From positions 1 to 64,000 of IMG/VR virus record IMGVR_UViG_3300046660_000488: a stretch of DNA of 64,000 bases. One strand, given 5' to 3'. A model generated the notes under the pieces. It ran no database searches. It was not told the origin of the DNA and saw nothing but the letters and a program-made list of their open reading frames with translations. This document shows positions 26,454-42,534 of this stretch, piece by piece (within the stretch, counting starts at the first letter, position 1; every line of letters begins with the position of its first letter). The position numbers were made by a program, and so were the translations under genes.

Positions 26454-26753
26454 TCACGAAAGGGGTTTCGGTGTAACCCCATGATTTTTCATGATATTTT
26501 CCATCGTTTCGATGGCGTGATCATGGTCGCTGATTTTGTCCTCGAATCGAGAAATCATGATTTCAATCATGCGCTCACCGTCGCCGTTGCCCATGAAGGA
26601 CCAGCGCTGCGACAAGTCTTTGTGCTGTGCACGGACGTTCTGCAACTGCAAGGTTGCCATTCGGTGCATTTCCGGTATGACCCGGAGAGGCACAGTTTCG
26701 AAATCTCGCAAGTCACCGTCGTTGTCGTAGATGACGTAGTCAATCTCGTCCAT
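26454..26753 (-). CDS. hypothetical protein
   Basis: Short ORF. Confidence 0.55.
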   Translation of the reverse strand: MDEIDYVIYDNDGDLRDFETVPLRVIPEMHRMATLQLQNVRAQHKDLSQRWSFMGNGDGERMIEIMISRFEDKISDHDHAIETMENIMKNHGVTPKPLS

Positions 26754-27354
26754 GGTGATCCACCGGCCGATAGGGAGGGAGTGTTGCAAGGCGACGCTTG
26801 ACGTCTTCCCAGCTTGCGGGCTTCAGCCCCCAGCAATCGGCGCCGATGTCCGTGCGTTGGTCGCACTCGGCTTCCTTGAGTGAGCCGTGGCTGTGACCAT
26901 AGAGCATGATCGAACCGTGGTGCGACTTGTTCCAGACCATCGACGCATAGTGGAAGATGCAGATCATCTTGCCGTCCAAGCGGATTTCCATGTAGGGCTC
27001 GGACGATTGCCAGAGGCTGGACAGTCGAATTTCCACGTTGTCGTGGTTGCCCCAGACGAAATGCTTGCGGCCGTTCAGGCGCTCCAAGTATTTCTCTTCA
27101 GCCCCATGGGCCATCGCGAAGTCACCGGCGTGGTAGACATCGTCGTCGGGGTCAACCCGCTCGTTCCAGTAGCGGATCATGTCCTCGTCCATGCGCGCGA
27201 CGTCTAGGAAGACCTTCGGCTGACCCTTGTCGTCGAGGACCGGGCGGTTCTGGCTATCGAGGATGGGCTTGGAGTACGGCCGGTTGCAGTACTTGATCAC
27301 GTTGCGATGGCCAAAATGCGTATCGCTAGTGAACCATGTTTTTCTCTTTCTCAT
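26740..27354 (-). CDS. calcineurin-like metallophosphoesterase
   Basis: SDTHFGH, GDF, GNHD, FHY, GHSH. Confidence 0.92.
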   Translation of the reverse strand: MRKRKTWFTSDTHFGHRNVIKYCNRPYSKPILDSQNRPVLDDKGQPKVFLDVARMDEDMIRYWNERVDPDDDVYHAGDFAMAHGAEEKYLERLNGRKHFVWGNHDNVEIRLSSLWQSSEPYMEIRLDGKMICIFHYASMVWNKSHHGSIMLYGHSHGSLKEAECDQRTDIGADCWGLKPASWEDVKRRLATLPPYRPVDHHGRD

Positions 27355-27361
27355 CCACCCA

Positions 27362-27721
27362 TTATGCGGGAGGGAGATATTTTTGGTCAACCACTTCGTA
27401 ATCGGCGTCGATCACCCCGTCGTCGGCCTTCGCCTTAGCACGGGCGCGGAGGATTGCTTTTTCGTGCTCGATCTCGCGCTCGTACATATCGCGCATGAAC
27501 TCCATCATGACCTCAGCTTGAATGCCGAGCGCGATAGCCTTGCGGGTCTCCGGATCGTAGCTGGACCAGTCGTCGTCGAGGTGGCGCGCCTCGCGCTTGG
27601 CCCGAAGCTCGGCCATGCCGCGATCATGCTCGTCCCAGATGTGCTTGGCGTACAGCAGCGGGGCGAAGACGATGGCGAACAGGAAGATGGTCATGAACGC
27701 ATCCATGAATTCACGCATCAT
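27362..27721 (-). CDS. membrane-anchored hypothetical protein
   Basis: N-terminal TM; GGAGG SD. Confidence 0.65.
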   Translation of the reverse strand: MMREFMDAFMTIFLFAIVFAPLLYAKHIWDEHDRGMAELRAKREARHLDDDWSSYDPETRKAIALGIQAEVMMEFMRDMYEREIEHEKAILRARAKAKADDGVIDADYEVVDQKYLPPA

Positions 27722-29395: not shown

Positions 29396-29929
29396 CTACA
29401 GTTTTGAAGTTTTCACGTGCGAGAGGCAAGACGTATCAGCTAGAAGGATATCTGCTTGCTCGGTCCCGTAATTGTCAGGGATGATCCATCCTTCAAATCC
29501 TTGACGACGAAGGTGTTGCATCAGGTCCATGGCATACTCGCGCATACCGTTTCCGTCATCGACGCCTTCGTATTCGGCGTAGTAATCCATGATGGATCGG
29601 GTGAGAACCGCGAGACGGACCGGCCGTGAAACCGTGTACGTGATCAGTCGAGGCTTTCCGTCTTGATCAGACCAAGTAGAAAAATACTTTGCTGTATCAA
29701 CAGAGTTGGTTACCCACGAGAAATCATCGAGGCCATTACGCTCGTCGAACTTGGCGTTTGTTCCGTGATACACCGTCGTTCCTTTCTGAAGAACGTACTC
29801 GTCCGGGGCCGGAGGCCCATCGTCCTCATCTTCATCCTCATTGTCGTAACCGTCGTCATCACGGTCGTCGCCGTACTCTTGGAGGTTCAGGCTCTCCATG
29901 AGGGAGATAAAATCACGAAACTGGCTCAT
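29396..29929 (-). CDS. late, putatively virion-packaged ADP-ribosyltransferase-like protein
   Basis: TAAATA 5 nt before ATG; MSQFRDFISLMES leader; VYHGT, WVT...A.YF, GFEGW. Confidence 0.6.
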   Translation of the reverse strand: MSQFRDFISLMESLNLQEYGDDRDDDGYDNEDEDEDDGPPAPDEYVLQKGTTVYHGTNAKFDERNGLDDFSWVTNSVDTAKYFSTWSDQDGKPRLITYTVSRPVRLAVLTRSIMDYYAEYEGVDDGNGMREYAMDLMQHLRRQGFEGWIIPDNYGTEQADILLADTSCLSHVKTSKL

Positions 29930-29987
29930 GCCCGTATTTATGTGGTAAATAGGAATTGCGGACCATCCCGGTCCGAGGAGAAAAGTC

Positions 29988-30683
29988 ATGAAAAGGCTTC
30001 TTGAAATCCGCTCCGCTGAAGGCGGCGCCGATTCCCAACTGTTCGTCCAAGACCTGACCAAGTCGTACCTGCGTCTCTTCGCTCGCAAGGGCTGAAAGCA
30101 CCGCGTCGTTCGGGAACGGCCGTCAGACGCGGGCCTCTACGAGATCACCATCGAAGTCATTGGCTCTGGGGTCTCCAAACTCGAAAATGAAATCGGTGGC
30201 CACCGCATCCAGCGTGTGCCGCCAACAGAAAAACGGGGCCGGGTTCACACCAGCACCGTGACTGTCGCTGTCGTCGATCCTGACGTCGCGGTGTCGGACG
30301 TCTATGCCAAGCGCTCAGACAAAGACTTCCGCATCGAATGGTTCAGCGGCTCCGGCGCGGGCGGTCAACACCGCAACAAGCACCAGAACTCGTGCCGCGT
30401 GCACCACATCCCCACTGGAGTCTGTGAAGCACGTCAGGGCCGTGAGCGTATCTCCAATCTGAAGGACGCCATGGCCGCCATCAACGTCACCCTCGACAAG
30501 ATGGAGCGCGGGGATGTCGGGGCCACCTTGGCTTCGGTTCGCAAGGACCAAGTCGGGAGCGGAATGCGCGGCGATAAGACCGTGACAATCCGTTTCCAAG
30601 ACGATAAAGTGGTGCACGAAAATGGAAAAGCCATGACCGCCACTCGTTATATGAAGGGCTTCATGGACGATGTGTGGAGCTAA
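29988..30683 (+). CDS. RF1-like class I peptide chain release factor with in-frame UGA (30093-30095), probable readthrough
   Basis: LLEIRSAEGGADSQLF...RKG*KHRV continuing in the same frame to E.GGHRIQRVPPTEKRGRVHTSTVTVAV and SGAGGQH.NK; GAGGAG SD. Confidence 0.85.
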
Positions 30684-30685
30684 TT

Positions 30686-31129
30686 ATGGCGCGTTGGGAA
30701 ATCGGGGTCGCGAGCACCACCAGTGATGAGACCAACTGGACCGGTGAATACGTGCTCGCCAACCACGAAGGCCAAGCGCTTGAGCAGGCGGAGTTCAACG
30801 GGTACTATCGCAATGTGCGCGTGCGGCCGGAGCAGATTGACGTCGCTCCGGCCTTCGACCCGGACACAGCCTTCACGACCCGATACGCTTACATCGACCA
30901 GTCGAAACCGTTTGGTGACGGCTTCACCGGCGTTCGGATCGAGGAAGACGGGAAACCGGACAAGATCATATACGCCATCGACCCCTCTGGCGCGCCAAAG
31001 GTAGAGCCTGAGCCCGAGTACGATCTTCTTGACTTGCATGGCAAGACGATGGGGATCATGGCCATCATCGCGAGTGCTTGCTTTGTGCTCGGAATGCTGG
31101 TAGTCGGGCTCACTCAACTGTTTAGGTGA
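30686..31129 (+). CDS. hypothetical protein with C-terminal TM helix
   Basis: ORF immediately after the RF stop codon. Confidence 0.65.
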   Translation: MARWEIGVASTTSDETNWTGEYVLANHEGQALEQAEFNGYYRNVRVRPEQIDVAPAFDPDTAFTTRYAYIDQSKPFGDGFTGVRIEEDGKPDKIIYAIDPSGAPKVEPEPEYDLLDLHGKTMGIMAIIASACFVLGMLVVGLTQLFR

Positions 31130-31132
31130 CCC

Positions 31133-31711
31133 ATGAAACTGATCGTAACGACCGTCGAGAGCGTCGAGCCTTGGGGCGAAAAGCTGTCCCTCGTGAAGGT
31201 GGCCGGTGTCGAACACACCGTCGTCGCCAACCGTAAGGACGATGGTTCGTTCCGCTGGGAAGTCGGCCAACCGGTCGTCTACGTCCCCGAGAACGCGATC
31301 CTGCCGCAGGACGTCCTGCTCCTGCGCGGGTACTGGGAAGCCGGAGCCAAGAAGGGCATGCTGGCCAGCGGCAAGGGCAACCGGGTCAAGGGTCGCACCT
31401 TCGGCAAGGTCACGGCCGAGGACGGCACGGTCACCGATCCGGGCGTCGAGTCCAAGGGTCTGCTGTTCAAGGTCGATCCGAAGTTCACTGACACCGGCCG
31501 GAAGATGAACGTCAGCCGGGTTCGGGTGGACAACGACCTCACCGTCGTCGGCGATCCCACCGAAGAATACACCATCGACTTCGACACCAAGACCATCGGC
31601 GGCGACTATCACTCCGAAGGCTTCTCGGGCAAGCAGGTCGTTGTCTTCAAGAACGTCCAGATCGGCGACGACGTGACCGAATTCTTCGGCGCCACGGAAT
31701 TCACCGGCTAA
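31133..31711 (+). CDS. stand-alone OB-fold (tRNA-binding / RNA ligase N-terminal-like) protein
   Basis: VG..VVYVPE.AILP, RVK...F, S.GLL, GDDVTEFFG. Confidence 0.6.
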   Translation: MKLIVTTVESVEPWGEKLSLVKVAGVEHTVVANRKDDGSFRWEVGQPVVYVPENAILPQDVLLLRGYWEAGAKKGMLASGKGNRVKGRTFGKVTAEDGTVTDPGVESKGLLFKVDPKFTDTGRKMNVSRVRVDNDLTVVGDPTEEYTIDFDTKTIGGDYHSEGFSGKQVVVFKNVQIGDDVTEFFGATEFTG

Positions 31712-32769: not shown

Positions 32770-34437
32770 TTAATCTGCGCTTTGGCCCTTGAGCCATTCG
32801 TAGAAATCTTGGATCGTCAGACCGTGATGGTGGGGCTGCTTGATCATCGACGGATCGAAAATCATGTAGGTCCACGCGGCCTTGGCGTTGGCCAGCTTGC
32901 GGATTTCAATGGTCTCGGGGAATTTGATGCCGGTGGCGCCCAGCGCTTTCAGGTGATCGACGAACTCCGGCTGGTCCAGCAACCACCACCAGTGAGCTTG
33001 GATCAGGCTGGTCGTTGACGTTCCGTATTCCTCCTGCACGAGACGCAGGCCCAGCTTGCGAACGCTGACCGGCGATCTCGCGTAGTCCAGCACCTTGCTG
33101 GTGTCCACGTAGCAACGGAGCACGTCATAGTTGGCCCCGCTCTCAGCGCGGTTCGAGCCGAAATAGTTGGCCAGTTCCTTGCTGTCGGTCAGGAAGACGC
33201 CTTGGTTCTGAACCGTGCGGATCGACCCGAGGAACCCACCGCGCTGGCCCTTGGTCAGAGCAAAGCCGCTGGCCTTGATCTCGGCCGCCAGATGGCGCGG
33301 TGTGCCGTGGTAGAGGGGCGTGAGACCTTCCAAGGGTTTCTGGGCTTCCTCGCGCTTCTGCATCAGCAGAGCGTTGAGCGCTTGCAGCTTGTCCTTCGGG
33401 GCTCGACGCAGGCTGTCGGTGAACGCCTCGTAGCTGGACATGTCGAGACCAGACATATCGGGAGCATCCTCGGTGACCGGCTCCTTGAACATGTCGCCCA
33501 GTTCGCGACCGGTCAGGCCGGTCCCGTACTTGGTGTTGAACGTCACGTCGTCGCTGTTGAAATAACGACGCAGGCATTGCTCGACATTCACCGTGTCAGG
33601 AACCCCAACAACCGCGACGGTGTCGTCATACGGGCTGAGGCTCGCGTCGATCCGCTGCTCGGTGTCGTAGGGAATATGCAAGGCAATCGCGCCCTGAGCG
33701 TGGATCGCATATCGGGCGACCCAGAGGTAGATGTCCGCACCGACGACGAGACCCCGCAGGTCGCCGGTTTGGCACAGCTTCGTTATGGCTTTGGGGCTGG
33801 GGTTCTTGTAGGCGCGAAATCGCGGGTCAGCGGCCGGAAGCTCAGCTTCCGTGATCGCCTGTCCTTTGAATTCCTTGACCCACTGCATGACGCGCGGCTT
33901 GACCGACGCCATGGAATCTCGCCACTCGCGGTTCCGCCGGAAGAATGCCGGATCATGCGCGTGTGCGCGATCTCCAAGAGCTTTGACATCTTCAGCGTCG
34001 ATGTTCAGATCGACCACCGTGCCGTCTTCGAGCTTCAGAAACTGGTGGTCCCAGCTTCCTTCGATTTGGCCGCCGAACAGTTGCTGCGCGAACAGTGATG
34101 TGAACTTGCAGGAATACGACAGATCGGCCGGTTCCGGCGCGTAGCGTTCCTTCGCGCGCTCTTTCCATTTGGCCATCGCGAACTCGCGAGCCTTGGCGAT
34201 GTTCTCCGGAGTGGGCTCCAGCAGGCCAGCCTCTTCGGTCATCAGCTTGGCGATCCGGGGCTTGAACAGCTTCTGGTCGCCCTTGTCGGTCTTCAGGACA
34301 GGCTGGTTGTTCTTGTCCTTCGTGAAGCCCTTGACCTTGGCCTTGCGGTTCTTGAACTTGCCGACCAATACAGTGTCACCGACCTCAATGTCAGGCAACT
34401 CCAGAGTTTCGGATTCCAAGATTTCTTTCCAGCGCAT
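32770..34437 (-). CDS. late multidomain internal-virion-like protein with C-terminal ART-like domain
   Basis: TAAATA 4 nt before ATG; MRWKEILESE; LYHGT...GVFLT...A.YF. Confidence 0.7.
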   Translation of the reverse strand: MRWKEILESETLELPDIEVGDTVLVGKFKNRKAKVKGFTKDKNNQPVLKTDKGDQKLFKPRIAKLMTEEAGLLEPTPENIAKAREFAMAKWKERAKERYAPEPADLSYSCKFTSLFAQQLFGGQIEGSWDHQFLKLEDGTVVDLNIDAEDVKALGDRAHAHDPAFFRRNREWRDSMASVKPRVMQWVKEFKGQAITEAELPAADPRFRAYKNPSPKAITKLCQTGDLRGLVVGADIYLWVARYAIHAQGAIALHIPYDTEQRIDASLSPYDDTVAVVGVPDTVNVEQCLRRYFNSDDVTFNTKYGTGLTGRELGDMFKEPVTEDAPDMSGLDMSSYEAFTDSLRRAPKDKLQALNALLMQKREEAQKPLEGLTPLYHGTPRHLAAEIKASGFALTKGQRGGFLGSIRTVQNQGVFLTDSKELANYFGSNRAESGANYDVLRCYVDTSKVLDYARSPVSVRKLGLRLVQEEYGTSTTSLIQAHWWWLLDQPEFVDHLKALGATGIKFPETIEIRKLANAKAAWTYMIFDPSMIKQPHHHGLTIQDFYEWLKGQSAD

Positions 34438-42261: not shown

Positions 42262-42336
42262 GCCGGTGTAGCTCAGGGGTAGAGCGGAACTTTCGTAAAG
42301 TGATTGTCGGGGGTTCGATTCCCTCCTCCGGCACCA
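42262..42336 (+). tRNA. tRNA-Thr(CGT), atypical
   Basis: Cloverleaf with CCA; loop TT-CGT-AA; U-U in acceptor stem and only 3 Watson-Crick pairs in anticodon stem. Confidence 0.85.
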
Positions 42337-42359
42337 GAAACAACCCACATCCTTGTTCT

Positions 42360-42445
42360 GCCAACGTGGCTCAGTGGCGACAGCACCGGCTTTGTAAGCC
42401 GCCTCCGCAAGGACACCGTGGGTTCGAGTCCCACCGTTGGCTCCA
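42360..42445 (+). tRNA. tRNA-Thr(TGT) with long variable arm
   Basis: GCCAACG/CGTTGGC acceptor, loop TT-TGT-AA, variable hairpin TCC-GCAA-GGA, GTGGG-TTCGAGT-CCCAC, T-CCA. Confidence 0.9.
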
Positions 42446-42458
42446 ACTTTCTTGATAT

Positions 42459-42534
42459 GCTGGCGTGGCACAGTTGGTAGCGCGCTATACTCGTAATATA
42501 GAGGTCATCGGTTCGAATCCGGTCGCCAGCACCA
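42459..42534 (+). tRNA. tRNA-Thr(CGT)
   Basis: GCTGGCG/CGCCAGC acceptor, CTATA-CT-CGT-AA-TATAG, T-loop TTCGAAT, A-CCA. Confidence 0.93.

What the first reader, a model, noticed from the sequence alone, without database searches (positions are those of the whole stretch)
29988..30683. RF1-type release factor gene with an in-frame UGA at a Trp-type position: probable stop-codon readthrough sensor
Seen: SD GAGGAG, ATG 29988, 35 codons (LLEIRSAEGGADSQLF...RKG), TGA at 30093-95, then the same frame continues through the PxT motif (RVPPTE) and GGQ. The ORF track shows only the 3' part. Known: RF1 proteins often have ..GWK.. at this point; PxT specifies UAA/UAG, while UGA is read only by RF2; bacterial prfB autoregulates through an internal UGA plus a frameshift. 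The protein also lacks RF domain 1. Inference: full-length factor is made only when host RF2 activity is low and UGA is read through, probably as Trp, giving cross-regulation or ribosome rescue. Other genes here use TGA as a true stop, so this is not genome-wide recoding.
Basis: partly seen in the sequence, partly recalled or inferred. Interest (0 to 1): 0.85.

Follow-up and report, generated by a model that had tools for sequence, protein, structure and literature searches.

The report
Phage release-factor gene needing UGA readthrough
A giant phage carries a shortened copy of the bacterial protein that ends translation at UAA/UAG, and this gene is itself interrupted by a UGA stop that has been kept at the same tryptophan position in about a hundred relatives, so the protein can only be made when ribosomes read through that stop, a design long predicted for release-factor genes but reported as not found in bacterial ones.

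Summary
ATG 29988 opens 35 codons, TGA sits at 30093-95, and the same frame runs on through PPT and GGQ to TAA 30681-83. Both pieces hit one PCRF domain in order. The product is an RF1-type factor of about 231 aa (domains 2-4, no domain 1) in a complete 578 kb phage.

It is neither an error nor a pseudogene:
- The source run's own assembly matches at about 180x depth.
- A related soil strain keeps the TGA.
- 20 of 23 listed strain differences are at third codon positions.
- All 90 distinct relatives in this clade have TGA at this codon, while their other 197 Trp codons are all TGG.
- One clade member has TGG there, and the site aligns with the conserved Trp of canonical RF1.

TGA is the phage's commonest true stop, no tRNA has a UCA anticodon, and no other gene needs readthrough. 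The context is leaky (+4 base A 71, C 15, G 4, T 0), with a covarying hairpin 6 nt downstream in the window's subclade. Sister clades, including Myxococcota chromosomes, have a prfB-like GGAGG-N3-CTT-TGA-C +1 frameshift site at the adjacent codon.

Best reading: programmed UGA-to-Trp readthrough that throttles synthesis of the factor. Dependence on RF2 activity and Trp-tRNA supply is inferred, not shown.

The parts
29975..29980 (+). Shine-Dalgarno-like GAGGAG, 7 nt before the ATG
   Evidence: read directly from the sequence
29988..30092 (+). ORF part 1: 35 codons carrying the EIRSAEGGAD helix-tip motif (30003-30035) of the RF decoding domain
   Evidence: Pfam PCRF positions 103-134, E 5e-6. 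Amino-acid identity among clade members is 56%, at least as conserved as the body.
30093..30095 (+). In-frame UGA (codon 36) at the conserved Trp of the RF1 'G-W' motif; proposed readthrough site
   Evidence: TGA in 90 of 90 distinct relatives, TGG in one clade member. Identical in the source-run assembly at ~180x and kept in a related soil strain.
30096..30096 (+). +4 base A (UGA-A, a context prone to tRNA-Trp misreading)
   Evidence: +4 base is A 71, C 15, G 4, T 0 in 90 relatives, against T as the commonest base after the genome's genuine TGA stops. The literature basis is PMC5289835.
30101..30132 (+). Hairpin starting 6 nt after the UGA (stem 30101-30107 with 30126-30132); possible readthrough stimulator
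   Evidence: z = -1.95 in the window and down to -4.1 in relatives. Cells are 83.5% paired against 34-46% in slid controls, with compensatory changes at three stem pairs. The register is present in only 12 of 90 sequences.
30096..30680 (+). ORF part 2: 195 codons covering the rest of the decoding domain (QRVPPTE...HTS; PPT at 30219-30227), the GGQ domain (GGQ at 30360-30368) and domain 4
   Evidence: Pfam PCRF 138-194 plus RF-1. PDB phmmer gives RF1 99 bits and RF2 61 bits. The AF2 model of a relative 73% identical to this piece superposes on ribosome-bound RF1 at TM 0.86-0.90. 20 of 23 strain differences fall on third codon positions.
30681..30683 (+). Genuine terminator TAA (followed by T)
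   Evidence: read from the sequence. The clade's own terminator is TAA in 12 of 13.
30686..31129 (+). Next gene in the same direction (147 aa, hydrophobic C-terminal stretch, no Pfam hit), starting 2 nt after the RF stop; probably co-transcribed
   Evidence: It is not conserved next to the RF gene in the second huge phage.

Best explanation
The gene encodes a compact RF1-type class-I release factor of about 231 aa (decoding domain 2/4 plus GGQ domain 3, no domain 1) belonging to a 578 kb phage. Making it requires programmed readthrough of the UGA at codon 36.

Shown: the stop is real, site-specific and held by selection. Both flanks are under purifying selection as one reading frame. The site is the conserved Trp of RF1. 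The genome otherwise uses TGA as its main terminator.

Inferred: near-cognate tRNA-Trp(CCA) inserts Trp at UGA-A in competition with the host's RF2, the only factor that reads UGA. The yield of full-length factor would then be a small fraction of initiations, rising when RF2 is limiting or when charged tRNA-Trp is abundant. The phage brings two tRNA-Trp genes and a TrpRS. A hairpin 6 nt downstream may prolong the pause.

Once made, the factor would terminate at UAA and UAG. That would relieve RF2 of UAA work in a phage whose genes end mostly in UGA, closing an indirect negative-feedback loop.
For: Anatomy and family assignment.

Not an artefact: the source-run contig is identical at ~180x. An independent soil-study contig spans the TGA with all 3 of its differences elsewhere. 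20 of 23 listed strain differences are at third codon positions.

Conservation: a clade with 99/100 support holds 16 TGA, 1 TGG and 1 frameshift. Across 90 distinct sequences the site is TGA in all, against 197 TGG and 0 TGA at other Trp codons. The +4 base is A 71, C 15, G 4, T 0. pN is 0.2-0.35 on both sides with saturated pS.

Standard code: coding density 0.89; stops TGA 388, TAA 279, TAG 99; no tRNA with a UCA anticodon; this is the only same-frame junction without a start codon in 30 codons. A second complete huge phage gives the same picture. The same TGA occurs in contigs of cultured Thalassospira and Jiella.

Trp supply: TrpRS and two tRNA-Trp genes.

RNA structure.

Parallel solution in sister clades: a prfB-like SD-CTT-TGA-C +1 site one codon away.

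Literature: UGA-A is misread by tRNA-Trp and +4C terminates poorly (PMC5289835).
Against: There are no expression data of any kind: no RNA, peptide or reporter result. The host is unknown. The inserted residue is inferred only from the TGG alternation and the RF1 alignment.

RF2 sensing is not demonstrated. UGA may be fixed merely because it is the only stop one wobble step from Trp, and constant leaky readthrough would act as a plain attenuator. In the frameshift clades the stop is TAG in about a fifth to a quarter of sites and TAA in one, so RF2 specificity is not obligatory for the family.

The hairpin register exists in only 12 of 90 sequences and was derived from those same sequences. UAA/UAG specificity of the PPT variant is predicted from motifs, not measured. 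Whether a factor without domain 1 works efficiently on the ribosome is untested. Some low-GC relatives could be genuinely TGA-recoded phages, because the test on 6.5 kb loci was too noisy to tell.
Confidence: 0.72

Rival explanations
1. Plain attenuator. The UGA is read through at a fixed low rate and only keeps the dose of a potentially harmful extra release factor low, with no physiological sensing of RF2.
For: Overexpressed release factors reduce fitness (PMC12421855). UGA-A is intrinsically leaky. The stop identity varies (TGA, TAG, TAA) at the equivalent frameshift sites of sister clades.
Against: A weak ribosome-binding site or promoter would give the same result. Instead, two different recoding devices (readthrough and an SD-stimulated +1 shift) are maintained at the same spot across hundreds of diverged genes, with a selected +4 context and local RNA structure. 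Any UGA readthrough necessarily competes with RF2.
Confidence: 0.2
2. True autoregulation. The truncated PPT factor itself recognises UGA (RF2-like or omnipotent specificity), so the in-frame UGA is a prfB-style negative feedback on its own level.
For: Evolution has repeatedly placed UGA at the recoding site, as in prfB. The tripeptide is an unusual PPT, invariant in the first 58 sequences examined; later hits include SPT in one relative (P0016) and PVT in two (L173, L174). TGA, TAG and TAA all occur at the family's frameshift sites, as would be expected if all three were recognised.
Against: The RF1 decoding signature Q-R-V-P-x-T-E...H-T-S is intact, including the Gln that RF2 replaces by Val. 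Sequence and fold are closer to RF1 (99 vs 61 bits; 34% vs 25-28% identity). Two close relatives have the canonical PVT.
Confidence: 0.1
3. Code switch. TGA is decoded as Trp genome-wide or late in infection by a dedicated suppressor, as in TGA-recoded phages that carry RF1 plus TrpRS, and the RF gene merely follows that code.
For: RF1 together with TrpRS is the 'code change module' described for TGA-recoded Jade phages, and this phage has both. Some low-GC relatives have several in-frame TGAs (L038, L041, L056).
Against: Two complete genomes show no tRNA(UCA) (G001: the 400 of 517 kb analysed). TGA ends 35-51% of their genes. TGA junctions show no excess, and no other gene is interrupted. Within the genes TGA appears only at this codon, and all 197 other Trp codons are TGG. 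The same TGA is found in contigs of cultured Alphaproteobacteria.
Confidence: 0.05
4. Selenocysteine insertion directed by the downstream hairpin acting as a bacterial SECIS element.
For: A conserved hairpin begins 6 nt after the UGA, at about the distance of a bacterial SECIS.
Against: The homologous residue is Trp (TGG in L062, W in RF1 structures), never Cys. There is no tRNA-Sec in the phage. The hairpin is absent from most of the clade although the TGA is universal.
Confidence: 0.02
5. Dead gene, sequencing error, or two separate products (a 35-aa peptide plus a reinitiated C-terminal protein).
For: Automatic gene callers treat it this way: database entries are 140-195 aa fragments.
Against: Reads and independent assemblies agree. 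The TGA is invariant in 90 diverged sequences, with purifying selection on both sides. There is no conserved start codon after the stop: the first in-frame start is 41 codons downstream in the window and 58 in G001. The N-terminal piece carries a motif that canonical RF1 uses for stop-codon recognition.
Confidence: 0.02

Closest known systems
prfB (RF2) autoregulatory +1 programmed frameshift
   Same: It is a class-I release-factor gene interrupted early by an in-frame UGA, and the decoding of that UGA competes with RF2. Sister clades of this family use the very same device (SD-like GGAGG, ~3 nt, CTT TGA C) at the codon next to the window's UGA.
   Different: The window's gene continues in the same frame, so it needs readthrough and not a frameshift. 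The factor is RF1-type, so the loop would be cross-regulation and not autoregulation. The site lies in domain 2 and not in domain 1. A review states that in-frame UGA readthrough was hypothesised for RF2, that none of the sequenced bacterial RF2 genes has it, and that the counterpart for RF1 genes (with UAG) is unknown (PMC5009743). A survey of more than 12,000 genomes found no programmed frameshift in prfA and never TAG in the prfB motif (PMC12421855).
Mimivirus/Megavirus class-I release factor gene (readthrough plus frameshift)
   Same: It is a giant virus carrying its own termination factor, whose translation needs recoding of internal stop codons. The authors interpret this as regulation of the factor's level (PMC3521657).
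   Different: That factor is of the eukaryotic/archaeal eRF1 type, in a virus of amoebae, and one gene uses both events. Here the factor is bacterial RF1-type, in a phage, with one event per gene and different clades using different events.
Plant eRF1-1 autoregulation by stop-codon readthrough
   Same: The level of a termination factor is coupled to readthrough of a stop codon in its own mRNA (PMC5397192, listed; abstract only).
   Different: It is eukaryotic, acts through the gene's normal stop codon together with nonsense-mediated decay, and is true autoregulation.
Code-change module of TGA-recoded Jade phages (RF1 + TrpRS + suppressor tRNA)
   Same: It is a phage-encoded RF1 together with a phage TrpRS. 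This phage also has both.
   Different: Those phages recode TGA genome-wide, carry a UCA suppressor tRNA, and their module is written in the standard code. This phage uses TGA as its main stop, has no UCA tRNA, and has a single UGA inside the RF gene itself.
Phage Q-beta A1 (coat readthrough) protein
   Same: It is programmed low-level readthrough of a leaky UGA by tRNA-Trp in a phage gene. This rests on my own knowledge and was not checked here.
   Different: It produces a C-terminally extended minor variant of an otherwise functional protein. Here the short product is presumably useless and only the readthrough product is functional.
PrfH and ArfB (RF homologues lacking domain 1)
   Same: They are natural class-I RF relatives that work on the ribosome without domain 1. 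PrfH appears among the fold matches at TM 0.70.
   Different: They lack a stop-codon reading head and act in ribosome rescue. This family keeps the full RF1 decoding signature. The NCBIfam prfH score is 40 bits against a cut-off of 167.

Membership tests
Bacterial release factor 1 (prfA, NCBIfam TIGR00019 / NF001859) | RF-1 (GGQ) catalytic domain | tested here: met
   Pfam PF00472 50.6 bits against a cut-off of 35; GGQ at 30360-30368
Bacterial release factor 1 (prfA, NCBIfam TIGR00019 / NF001859) | RF1-type decoding head: PxT tripeptide with Gln three residues before it, plus the E...H-T-S residues | tested here: met
   GGHRIQRVPPTEKRGRVHTS aligned to E. coli RF1 [20 protein letters not shown]. 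x = P is unusual. Specificity was not measured.
Bacterial release factor 1 (prfA, NCBIfam TIGR00019 / NF001859) | N-terminal domain 1 (about 105 residues) | tested here: not met
   The ORF begins 5 residues before the EIR motif, at model position ~107-115 of 347-361. All 58 conceptual products are 214-240 aa.
Bacterial release factor 1 (prfA, NCBIfam TIGR00019 / NF001859) | Score above the curated equivalog cut-off | tested here: not met
   133 bits (plus 22 for the N-terminal piece) against cut-offs of 423 and 400
Bacterial release factor 1 (prfA, NCBIfam TIGR00019 / NF001859) | Fold of RF1 domains 2-4 | tested here: met
   AF2 model of relative P0003 (pLDDT 90.3): TM 0.86-0.90 and rmsd 2.1-3.1 A to ribosome-bound RF1
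Release factor 2 (prfB) | SPF tripeptide and an RF2-type sequence | tested here: not met
   PPT, not SPF. prfB 72 bits against prfA 133 bits. PDB gives RF2 61 bits against RF1 99 bits.
Programmed stop-codon readthrough | In-frame stop conserved at one codon across diverged homologues, with coding constraint on both sides | tested here: met
   TGA in 90 of 90 distinct sequences. pN 0.2-0.35 with saturated pS on both sides. 20 of 23 strain differences at third positions.
Programmed stop-codon readthrough | Leaky stop context | tested here: met
   UGA with +4 base A 71, C 15, G 4, T 0, whereas T is the commonest +4 base at the genome's genuine TGA stops (PMC5289835)
Programmed stop-codon readthrough | Downstream stimulatory RNA structure | tested here: inconclusive
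   A hairpin with compensatory pairs occurs in 12 of 90 sequences. The clade-wide mean z is -1.25 against +0.13 to -0.71 in control windows.
Programmed stop-codon readthrough | Full-length product detected, and the inserted residue identified | not testable with these tools
   Only DNA runs hold the sequence. No proteomic data are available.
Genome-wide TGA-to-Trp recoding (genetic code 4) | Many genes with in-frame TGA, TGA rare as a terminator, and a tRNA with a UCA anticodon | tested here: not met
   TGA ends 388 of 766 gene calls. Junction counts are TAA 20, TGA 19, TAG 6. There is no UCA tRNA among 69 tRNAs. The RF junction is the only one of its kind. G001 gives the same result.
Bacterial selenoprotein gene | UGA with a SECIS hairpin, Cys in homologues, and Sec machinery | tested here: not met
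   A hairpin is present in a subclade only. The homologous residue is Trp, never Cys. The phage has no tRNA-Sec.
PrfH (release factor H) | Score above the curated cut-off | tested here: not met
   40 bits against a cut-off of 166.65

The most novel reading that the evidence does not exclude
These compact PPT factors are a self-contained, phage- and Myxococcota-borne termination system with altered (omnipotent or UGA-including) specificity. The UGA readthrough site, and the CTT-UGA-C, CTT-UAG-C and CTT-UAA-C shift sites of its relatives, would then be true autoregulatory sensors. In huge phages that also carry amber-suppressor tRNAs, the factor would be one arm of a phage-controlled re-tuning of stop-codon meaning during infection.
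Probability: 0.1. Interest if true: 0.92.

Novelty: new variant of a known kind. Interest (0 to 1): 0.8.

Why it matters
Control of release-factor levels by recoding is a textbook case, but it is known in bacteria only as the prfB +1 frameshift. A review records that the simpler design (an in-frame UGA read through when RF2 is scarce) was predicted before the genes were sequenced. It reports that none of the sequenced bacterial RF2 genes has such a UGA and that the counterpart for RF1 genes is also unknown (PMC5009743). A 2025 survey of more than 12,000 genomes concluded that RF1 genes are not regulated by programmed frameshifting (PMC12421855).

Here an RF1-type family shows both devices at the same spot: in-frame UGA at a Trp codon in about 100 phage and prophage-like sequences, and a prfB-like shift site in sister clades, including Myxococcota chromosomes.

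If it works as proposed, it offers three things:
- a natural cross-talk circuit between the two termination pathways;
- a minimal release factor without domain 1 for structural and synthetic-biology work;
- a reason why huge phages carry termination factors at all.

There is also a practical consequence. Public databases hold these genes either as truncated fragments or as code-4 translations that hide the stop, so the family is systematically mis-annotated.

Tried and rejected
- **First junction screen.** The crude same-frame test was confounded by shadow frames in a 59% GC genome. A stricter version missed even the RF gene. I replaced both with a GC3-filtered codon model.
- **Other readthrough candidates.** 353557 is followed by an RNA-ligase-like gene with its own ATG, 237663 is a non-coding-looking frame, and 4158 (TAA) is followed by a gene with its own SD and ATG. 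None is real.
- **Specialised UGA-reading tRNA-Trp (4-bp anticodon stem).** Both phage tRNA-Trp genes have normal 5-bp stems.
- **"Full-length" database proteins with W at the site.** I first took these as TGG relatives. Three of the four whose DNA could be read are code-4 gene calls over a TGA, and only P0045 is a true TGG.
- **Genetic code of relatives from 6.5 kb loci.** Too noisy to use.
- **Pairwise dN/dS.** dS is saturated, so only pN against pS could be reported.
- **Synteny around the gene.** None between the two huge phages. Pfam gave nothing for the neighbours, and the promoter/terminator scan gave nothing above the shuffles.
- **GenBank phages.** No close homologue; the best hits are about 36-40% identical, and many sit on unannotated contigs that may be host sequence.
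- **Fixed hairpin register across the whole clade.** Only 12 of 90 sequences have it.
- **Literature.** I found no description of interrupted phage or RF1-like release-factor genes in the searched library. This does not prove there is none.

Full report
**The observation.** GAGGAG lies at 29975-29980 and ATG at 29988. Thirty-five codons follow, then TGA at 30093-30095, and the same frame continues for 195 codons to TAA at 30681-30683. It passes through RVPPTE (PPT at 30219-30227) and GGQ (30360-30368). Pfam places the two pieces on one PCRF domain in order (profile 103-134, then 138-194), followed by the RF-1 domain. NCBIfam ranks prfA (133 bits) above prfB (72) and prfH (40), all far below their curated cut-offs. 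The ORF starts five residues before the EIR motif, so domain 1 of canonical factors is absent.

**What genome this is.** The window is the first 64 kb of a complete virus record of 578,292 bp with direct terminal repeats and GC 59%. It has 69 tRNA genes, including two tRNA-Trp(CCA) and two with anticodon CUA, but none with UCA. The only DNA similarity to isolated phages is a short stretch shared with Caulobacter jumbo phages. It has one RF-1-domain gene, the one in question. It also encodes a TrpRS (genome 321124-322272; trpS 289 bits, cut-off 177), a TyrRS and PTH2-like proteins.

**Not an error and not a dead gene.**
- The source-like run's own assembly covers 29400-31200 without a single difference at a word depth of about 180.
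- Contigs from an independent soil study carry a related strain. One of them spans 30054-30209 with three differences, all away from the TGA.
- Of the 23 listed strain differences inside 30096-30680, 20 fall on third codon positions.
- Among clade members, synonymous sites are saturated (pS 0.6-1.1) while pN is 0.2-0.35 on both sides of the stop. The 35 N-terminal codons are at least as conserved (56% amino-acid identity) as the body (49%).

**Comparative evidence.** A scan of viral contigs gave 57 relatives. All conceptual products are 214-240 aa and lack domain 1. They fall into three classes:
- an in-frame TGA at codon +30 from the EIR motif (the window's class);
- a +1 frameshift at the adjacent codon, with an SD-like GGAGG/GGGGG, about three bases, then CTT TGA C (sometimes TAG, once TAA);
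- uninterrupted genes with W, F or another residue at the site.

The window's gene lies in a clade with 99/100 support holding 16 in-frame TGA, one genuine TGG (L062) and one frameshift.

Database proteins that looked full-length with W at the site turned out to be code-4 gene calls over GGT TGA AAG.

Scans of metagenome and genome contigs raised the count to 103 sites and 90 distinct sequences:
- TGA in every one, while the other in-frame Trp codons of the same genes are 197 TGG and 0 TGA;
- +4 base A 71, C 15, G 4, T 0;
- preceding codon Gly in 86 of 90.

The same TGA occurs in contigs of the cultured Alphaproteobacteria Thalassospira xianhensis and Jiella sp.. The TGG of the uninterrupted relative aligns with the conserved Trp of solved RF1 structures (..QGWKFEV....KGWNLEV..).

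**Not a different genetic code.** With a codon model trained on high-GC3 ORFs, coding density under the standard code is 0.89. Stops are TGA 388, TAA 279, TAG 99. Same-frame coding-coding junctions number TAA 20, TGA 19, TAG 6, in rough proportion to stop usage. Inspected one by one, every other junction has an ATG/GTG/TTG within the first 0-20 codons. The RF junction alone has none within 30 codons. I analysed a second complete huge phage with the same TGA (G001, 517 kb, GC 45%; 400 kb analysed). It gave a density of 0.89, stops TAA 312 / TGA 200 / TAG 61, no UCA tRNA, and again the RF junction as the outlier, with 58 start-less codons.

**What the protein is.** phmmer against solved structures puts RF1 first (99 bits) and RF2 well behind (61 bits). 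The RF1 decoding signature is intact: the Gln three residues before the tripeptide, P-x-T, Glu, and H-T-S. An AlphaFold model of the closest database relative (P0003, 73% identical to the post-TGA piece; pLDDT 90.3) superposes on ribosome-bound RF1 at TM 0.86-0.90. RF2 matches at lower identity, and PrfH at TM 0.70. By motif logic the factor should read UAA and UAG, but this was not measured.

**How it most likely works.** *Shown:* a selected, site-specific UGA at a Trp position in a gene that is under purifying selection as one frame, in a standard-code genome. *From established knowledge:* UGA is recognised only by RF2. UGA followed by A is particularly prone to misreading by tRNA-Trp, and UGA followed by C terminates poorly (PMC5289835). 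*Inferred:* tRNA-Trp(CCA) inserts Trp in competition with RF2, so the output of full-length factor is a small fraction of initiations. That fraction would rise when RF2 is limiting or when charged tRNA-Trp is abundant, and the phage supplies both tRNA-Trp and TrpRS. Because 51% of the phage's genes end in UGA and 36% in UAA, an extra UAA/UAG-reading factor would free RF2 for UGA. That would close an indirect negative-feedback loop.

**RNA structure.** A hairpin starting 6 nt after the UGA (30101-30132) may help. It folds better than shuffles in the window (z -1.95) and in several relatives (down to -4.1). It is 83.5% paired against 34-46% in slid controls. It shows compensatory changes at three pairs, in which synonymous third-position changes match non-synonymous partner changes. 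Clade-wide, the 52 nt after the UGA are more structured (mean z -1.25, 26% below -2) than control windows of the same genes (mean +0.13 to -0.71). However, the exact register exists in only 12 of 90 sequences, so this element is plausible and not established.

**Caveats and rivals.** No transcript, peptide or reporter data exist, and the host is unknown.
- UGA may be fixed simply because it is the only stop one wobble step from Trp. Constant leakiness would make the site a plain attenuator.
- The use of TAG (and once TAA) at the frameshift sites of sister clades shows that RF2 specificity is not required family-wide.
- True autoregulation through an altered, UGA-reading specificity of the PPT head cannot be excluded without biochemistry, but it is disfavoured by the intact RF1 signature and by PVT in two close relatives.
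- A late code switch, selenocysteine insertion, a split product and a pseudogene are each contradicted by several results, set out under the rival explanations.

**Comparison with what is known.** The nearest relatives in mechanism are prfB +1 autoregulation, the Mimivirus/Megavirus eRF1 gene that needs a readthrough and a frameshift (PMC3521657), plant eRF1 readthrough autoregulation, and the RF1 + TrpRS + suppressor-tRNA module of TGA-recoded Jade phages.
- A review states that in-frame UGA readthrough was once hypothesised for RF2, that none of the sequenced bacterial RF2 genes has it, and that the RF1 counterpart is unknown (PMC5009743).
- A survey of more than 12,000 genomes found no programmed frameshift in prfA and never TAG in the prfB motif (PMC12421855).
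- RECODE's CUU-stop sites all belong to prfB (PMC10885494), and GeneTack lists only prfB among release-factor clusters.
- Huge phages are known to carry RF1 and RF2 genes (PMC7162821), but I found no mention of interruptions in them.

I therefore rate this as a new variant of a known kind. It is not a member of the curated prfA family, because domain 1 is missing and the score is below the cut-off. It is an RF1-derived compact family whose members are expressed through recoding.

Noticed in passing
L017-L057 (viral contigs); L189-L251 (genome contigs), e.g. L203, L231, L237, L238: Sister clades of the same truncated RF1-like family carry a textbook prfB-type +1 site (GGAGG/GGGAG, ~3 nt, CTT TGA C; TAG in about a fifth to a quarter, TAA once) at the codon next to the window's UGA. 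They include chromosomes of cultured Myxococcota (Nannocystis spp., Minicystis rosea). This appears to contradict the published view that RF1-type genes lack programmed frameshifting.
   Followed up: partly
L190, L193, L195, L214, L224 (+41); L050, L052, L053, L058, L225 (+47); L198, L200, L229 (in-frame TGA at +41): There are further recoding hot spots 10-17 codons downstream of the first one. They use CTT TGA C or CTT TAG C shifts or an in-frame TGA, in Thiobacillus, Achromobacter, Variovorax, a Cupriavidus plasmid and low-GC phages.
   Followed up: no
genome G000:C1:109999-110155 (minus strand; outside the window); G001 117291-117364: Two tandem tRNA genes with anticodon CUA (amber suppressors) sit in a phage that uses TAG as a stop for about 13% of its genes and also encodes an RF1-type factor that should oppose them at UAG. 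The second huge phage with the same RF gene also has a tRNA(CUA).
   Followed up: partly
genome G000:C1:319120-322272 (outside the window): TyrRS (tyrS 307 bits) and TrpRS (trpS 289 bits) genes lie side by side. With two tRNA-Trp genes at 507963-508339, the phage can raise the supply of the tRNA that would misread UGA.
   Followed up: partly
P0001-P0120; L059-L061: Public protein databases hold this family either as fragments of 140-195 aa that start after the stop, or as 224-233 aa code-4 translations that silently turn the TGA into W. In both cases the interruption is hidden.
   Followed up: yes
L070 (NCBI assembly contig of 1,136,180 bp, range 602266-614733): The same GGT TGA AAG-interrupted gene lies on a 1.1 Mb contig among phage-like genes (ART-PolyVal, NUDIX, 2OG-Fe(II) oxygenase). 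This could be an exceptionally large phage, a concatemer or a mis-binned contig.
   Followed up: no
window 42262-42534: A cluster of three tRNA-Thr genes (CGU, UGU, CGU) on the + strand. The middle one is 86 nt long, unusually long for a tRNA-Thr.
   Followed up: no
genome G000:C1:457430-457499 (outside the window): ARAGORN reports a 70-nt tRNA-like gene with a two-base 'anticodon' (undetermined type). It may be a false call or a tRNA with an odd anticodon loop.
   Followed up: no
window 29396-29932 (minus strand) and 32770-34437 (minus strand): Both flanking proteins contain a '(V/L)YHGT' stretch. In L070 the gene upstream of the RF homologue is an ART-PolyVal ADP-ribosyltransferase. Pfam gave no significant hit for the window's proteins, so this is only a lead.
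   Followed up: no
L173, L174 (Rhodospirillales and Kiloniella MAG contigs); P0016/L061: The otherwise invariant PPT tripeptide is PVT (canonical RF1) in two close relatives and SPT in one. These natural variants would be useful for testing stop-codon specificity.
   Followed up: no
window 26740-27390 (minus strand): A calcineurin-like metallophosphoesterase domain protein (Pfam PF12850, E 8e-6, just under the cut-off). Homologues lie near the RF gene in L008 and L111.
   Followed up: no
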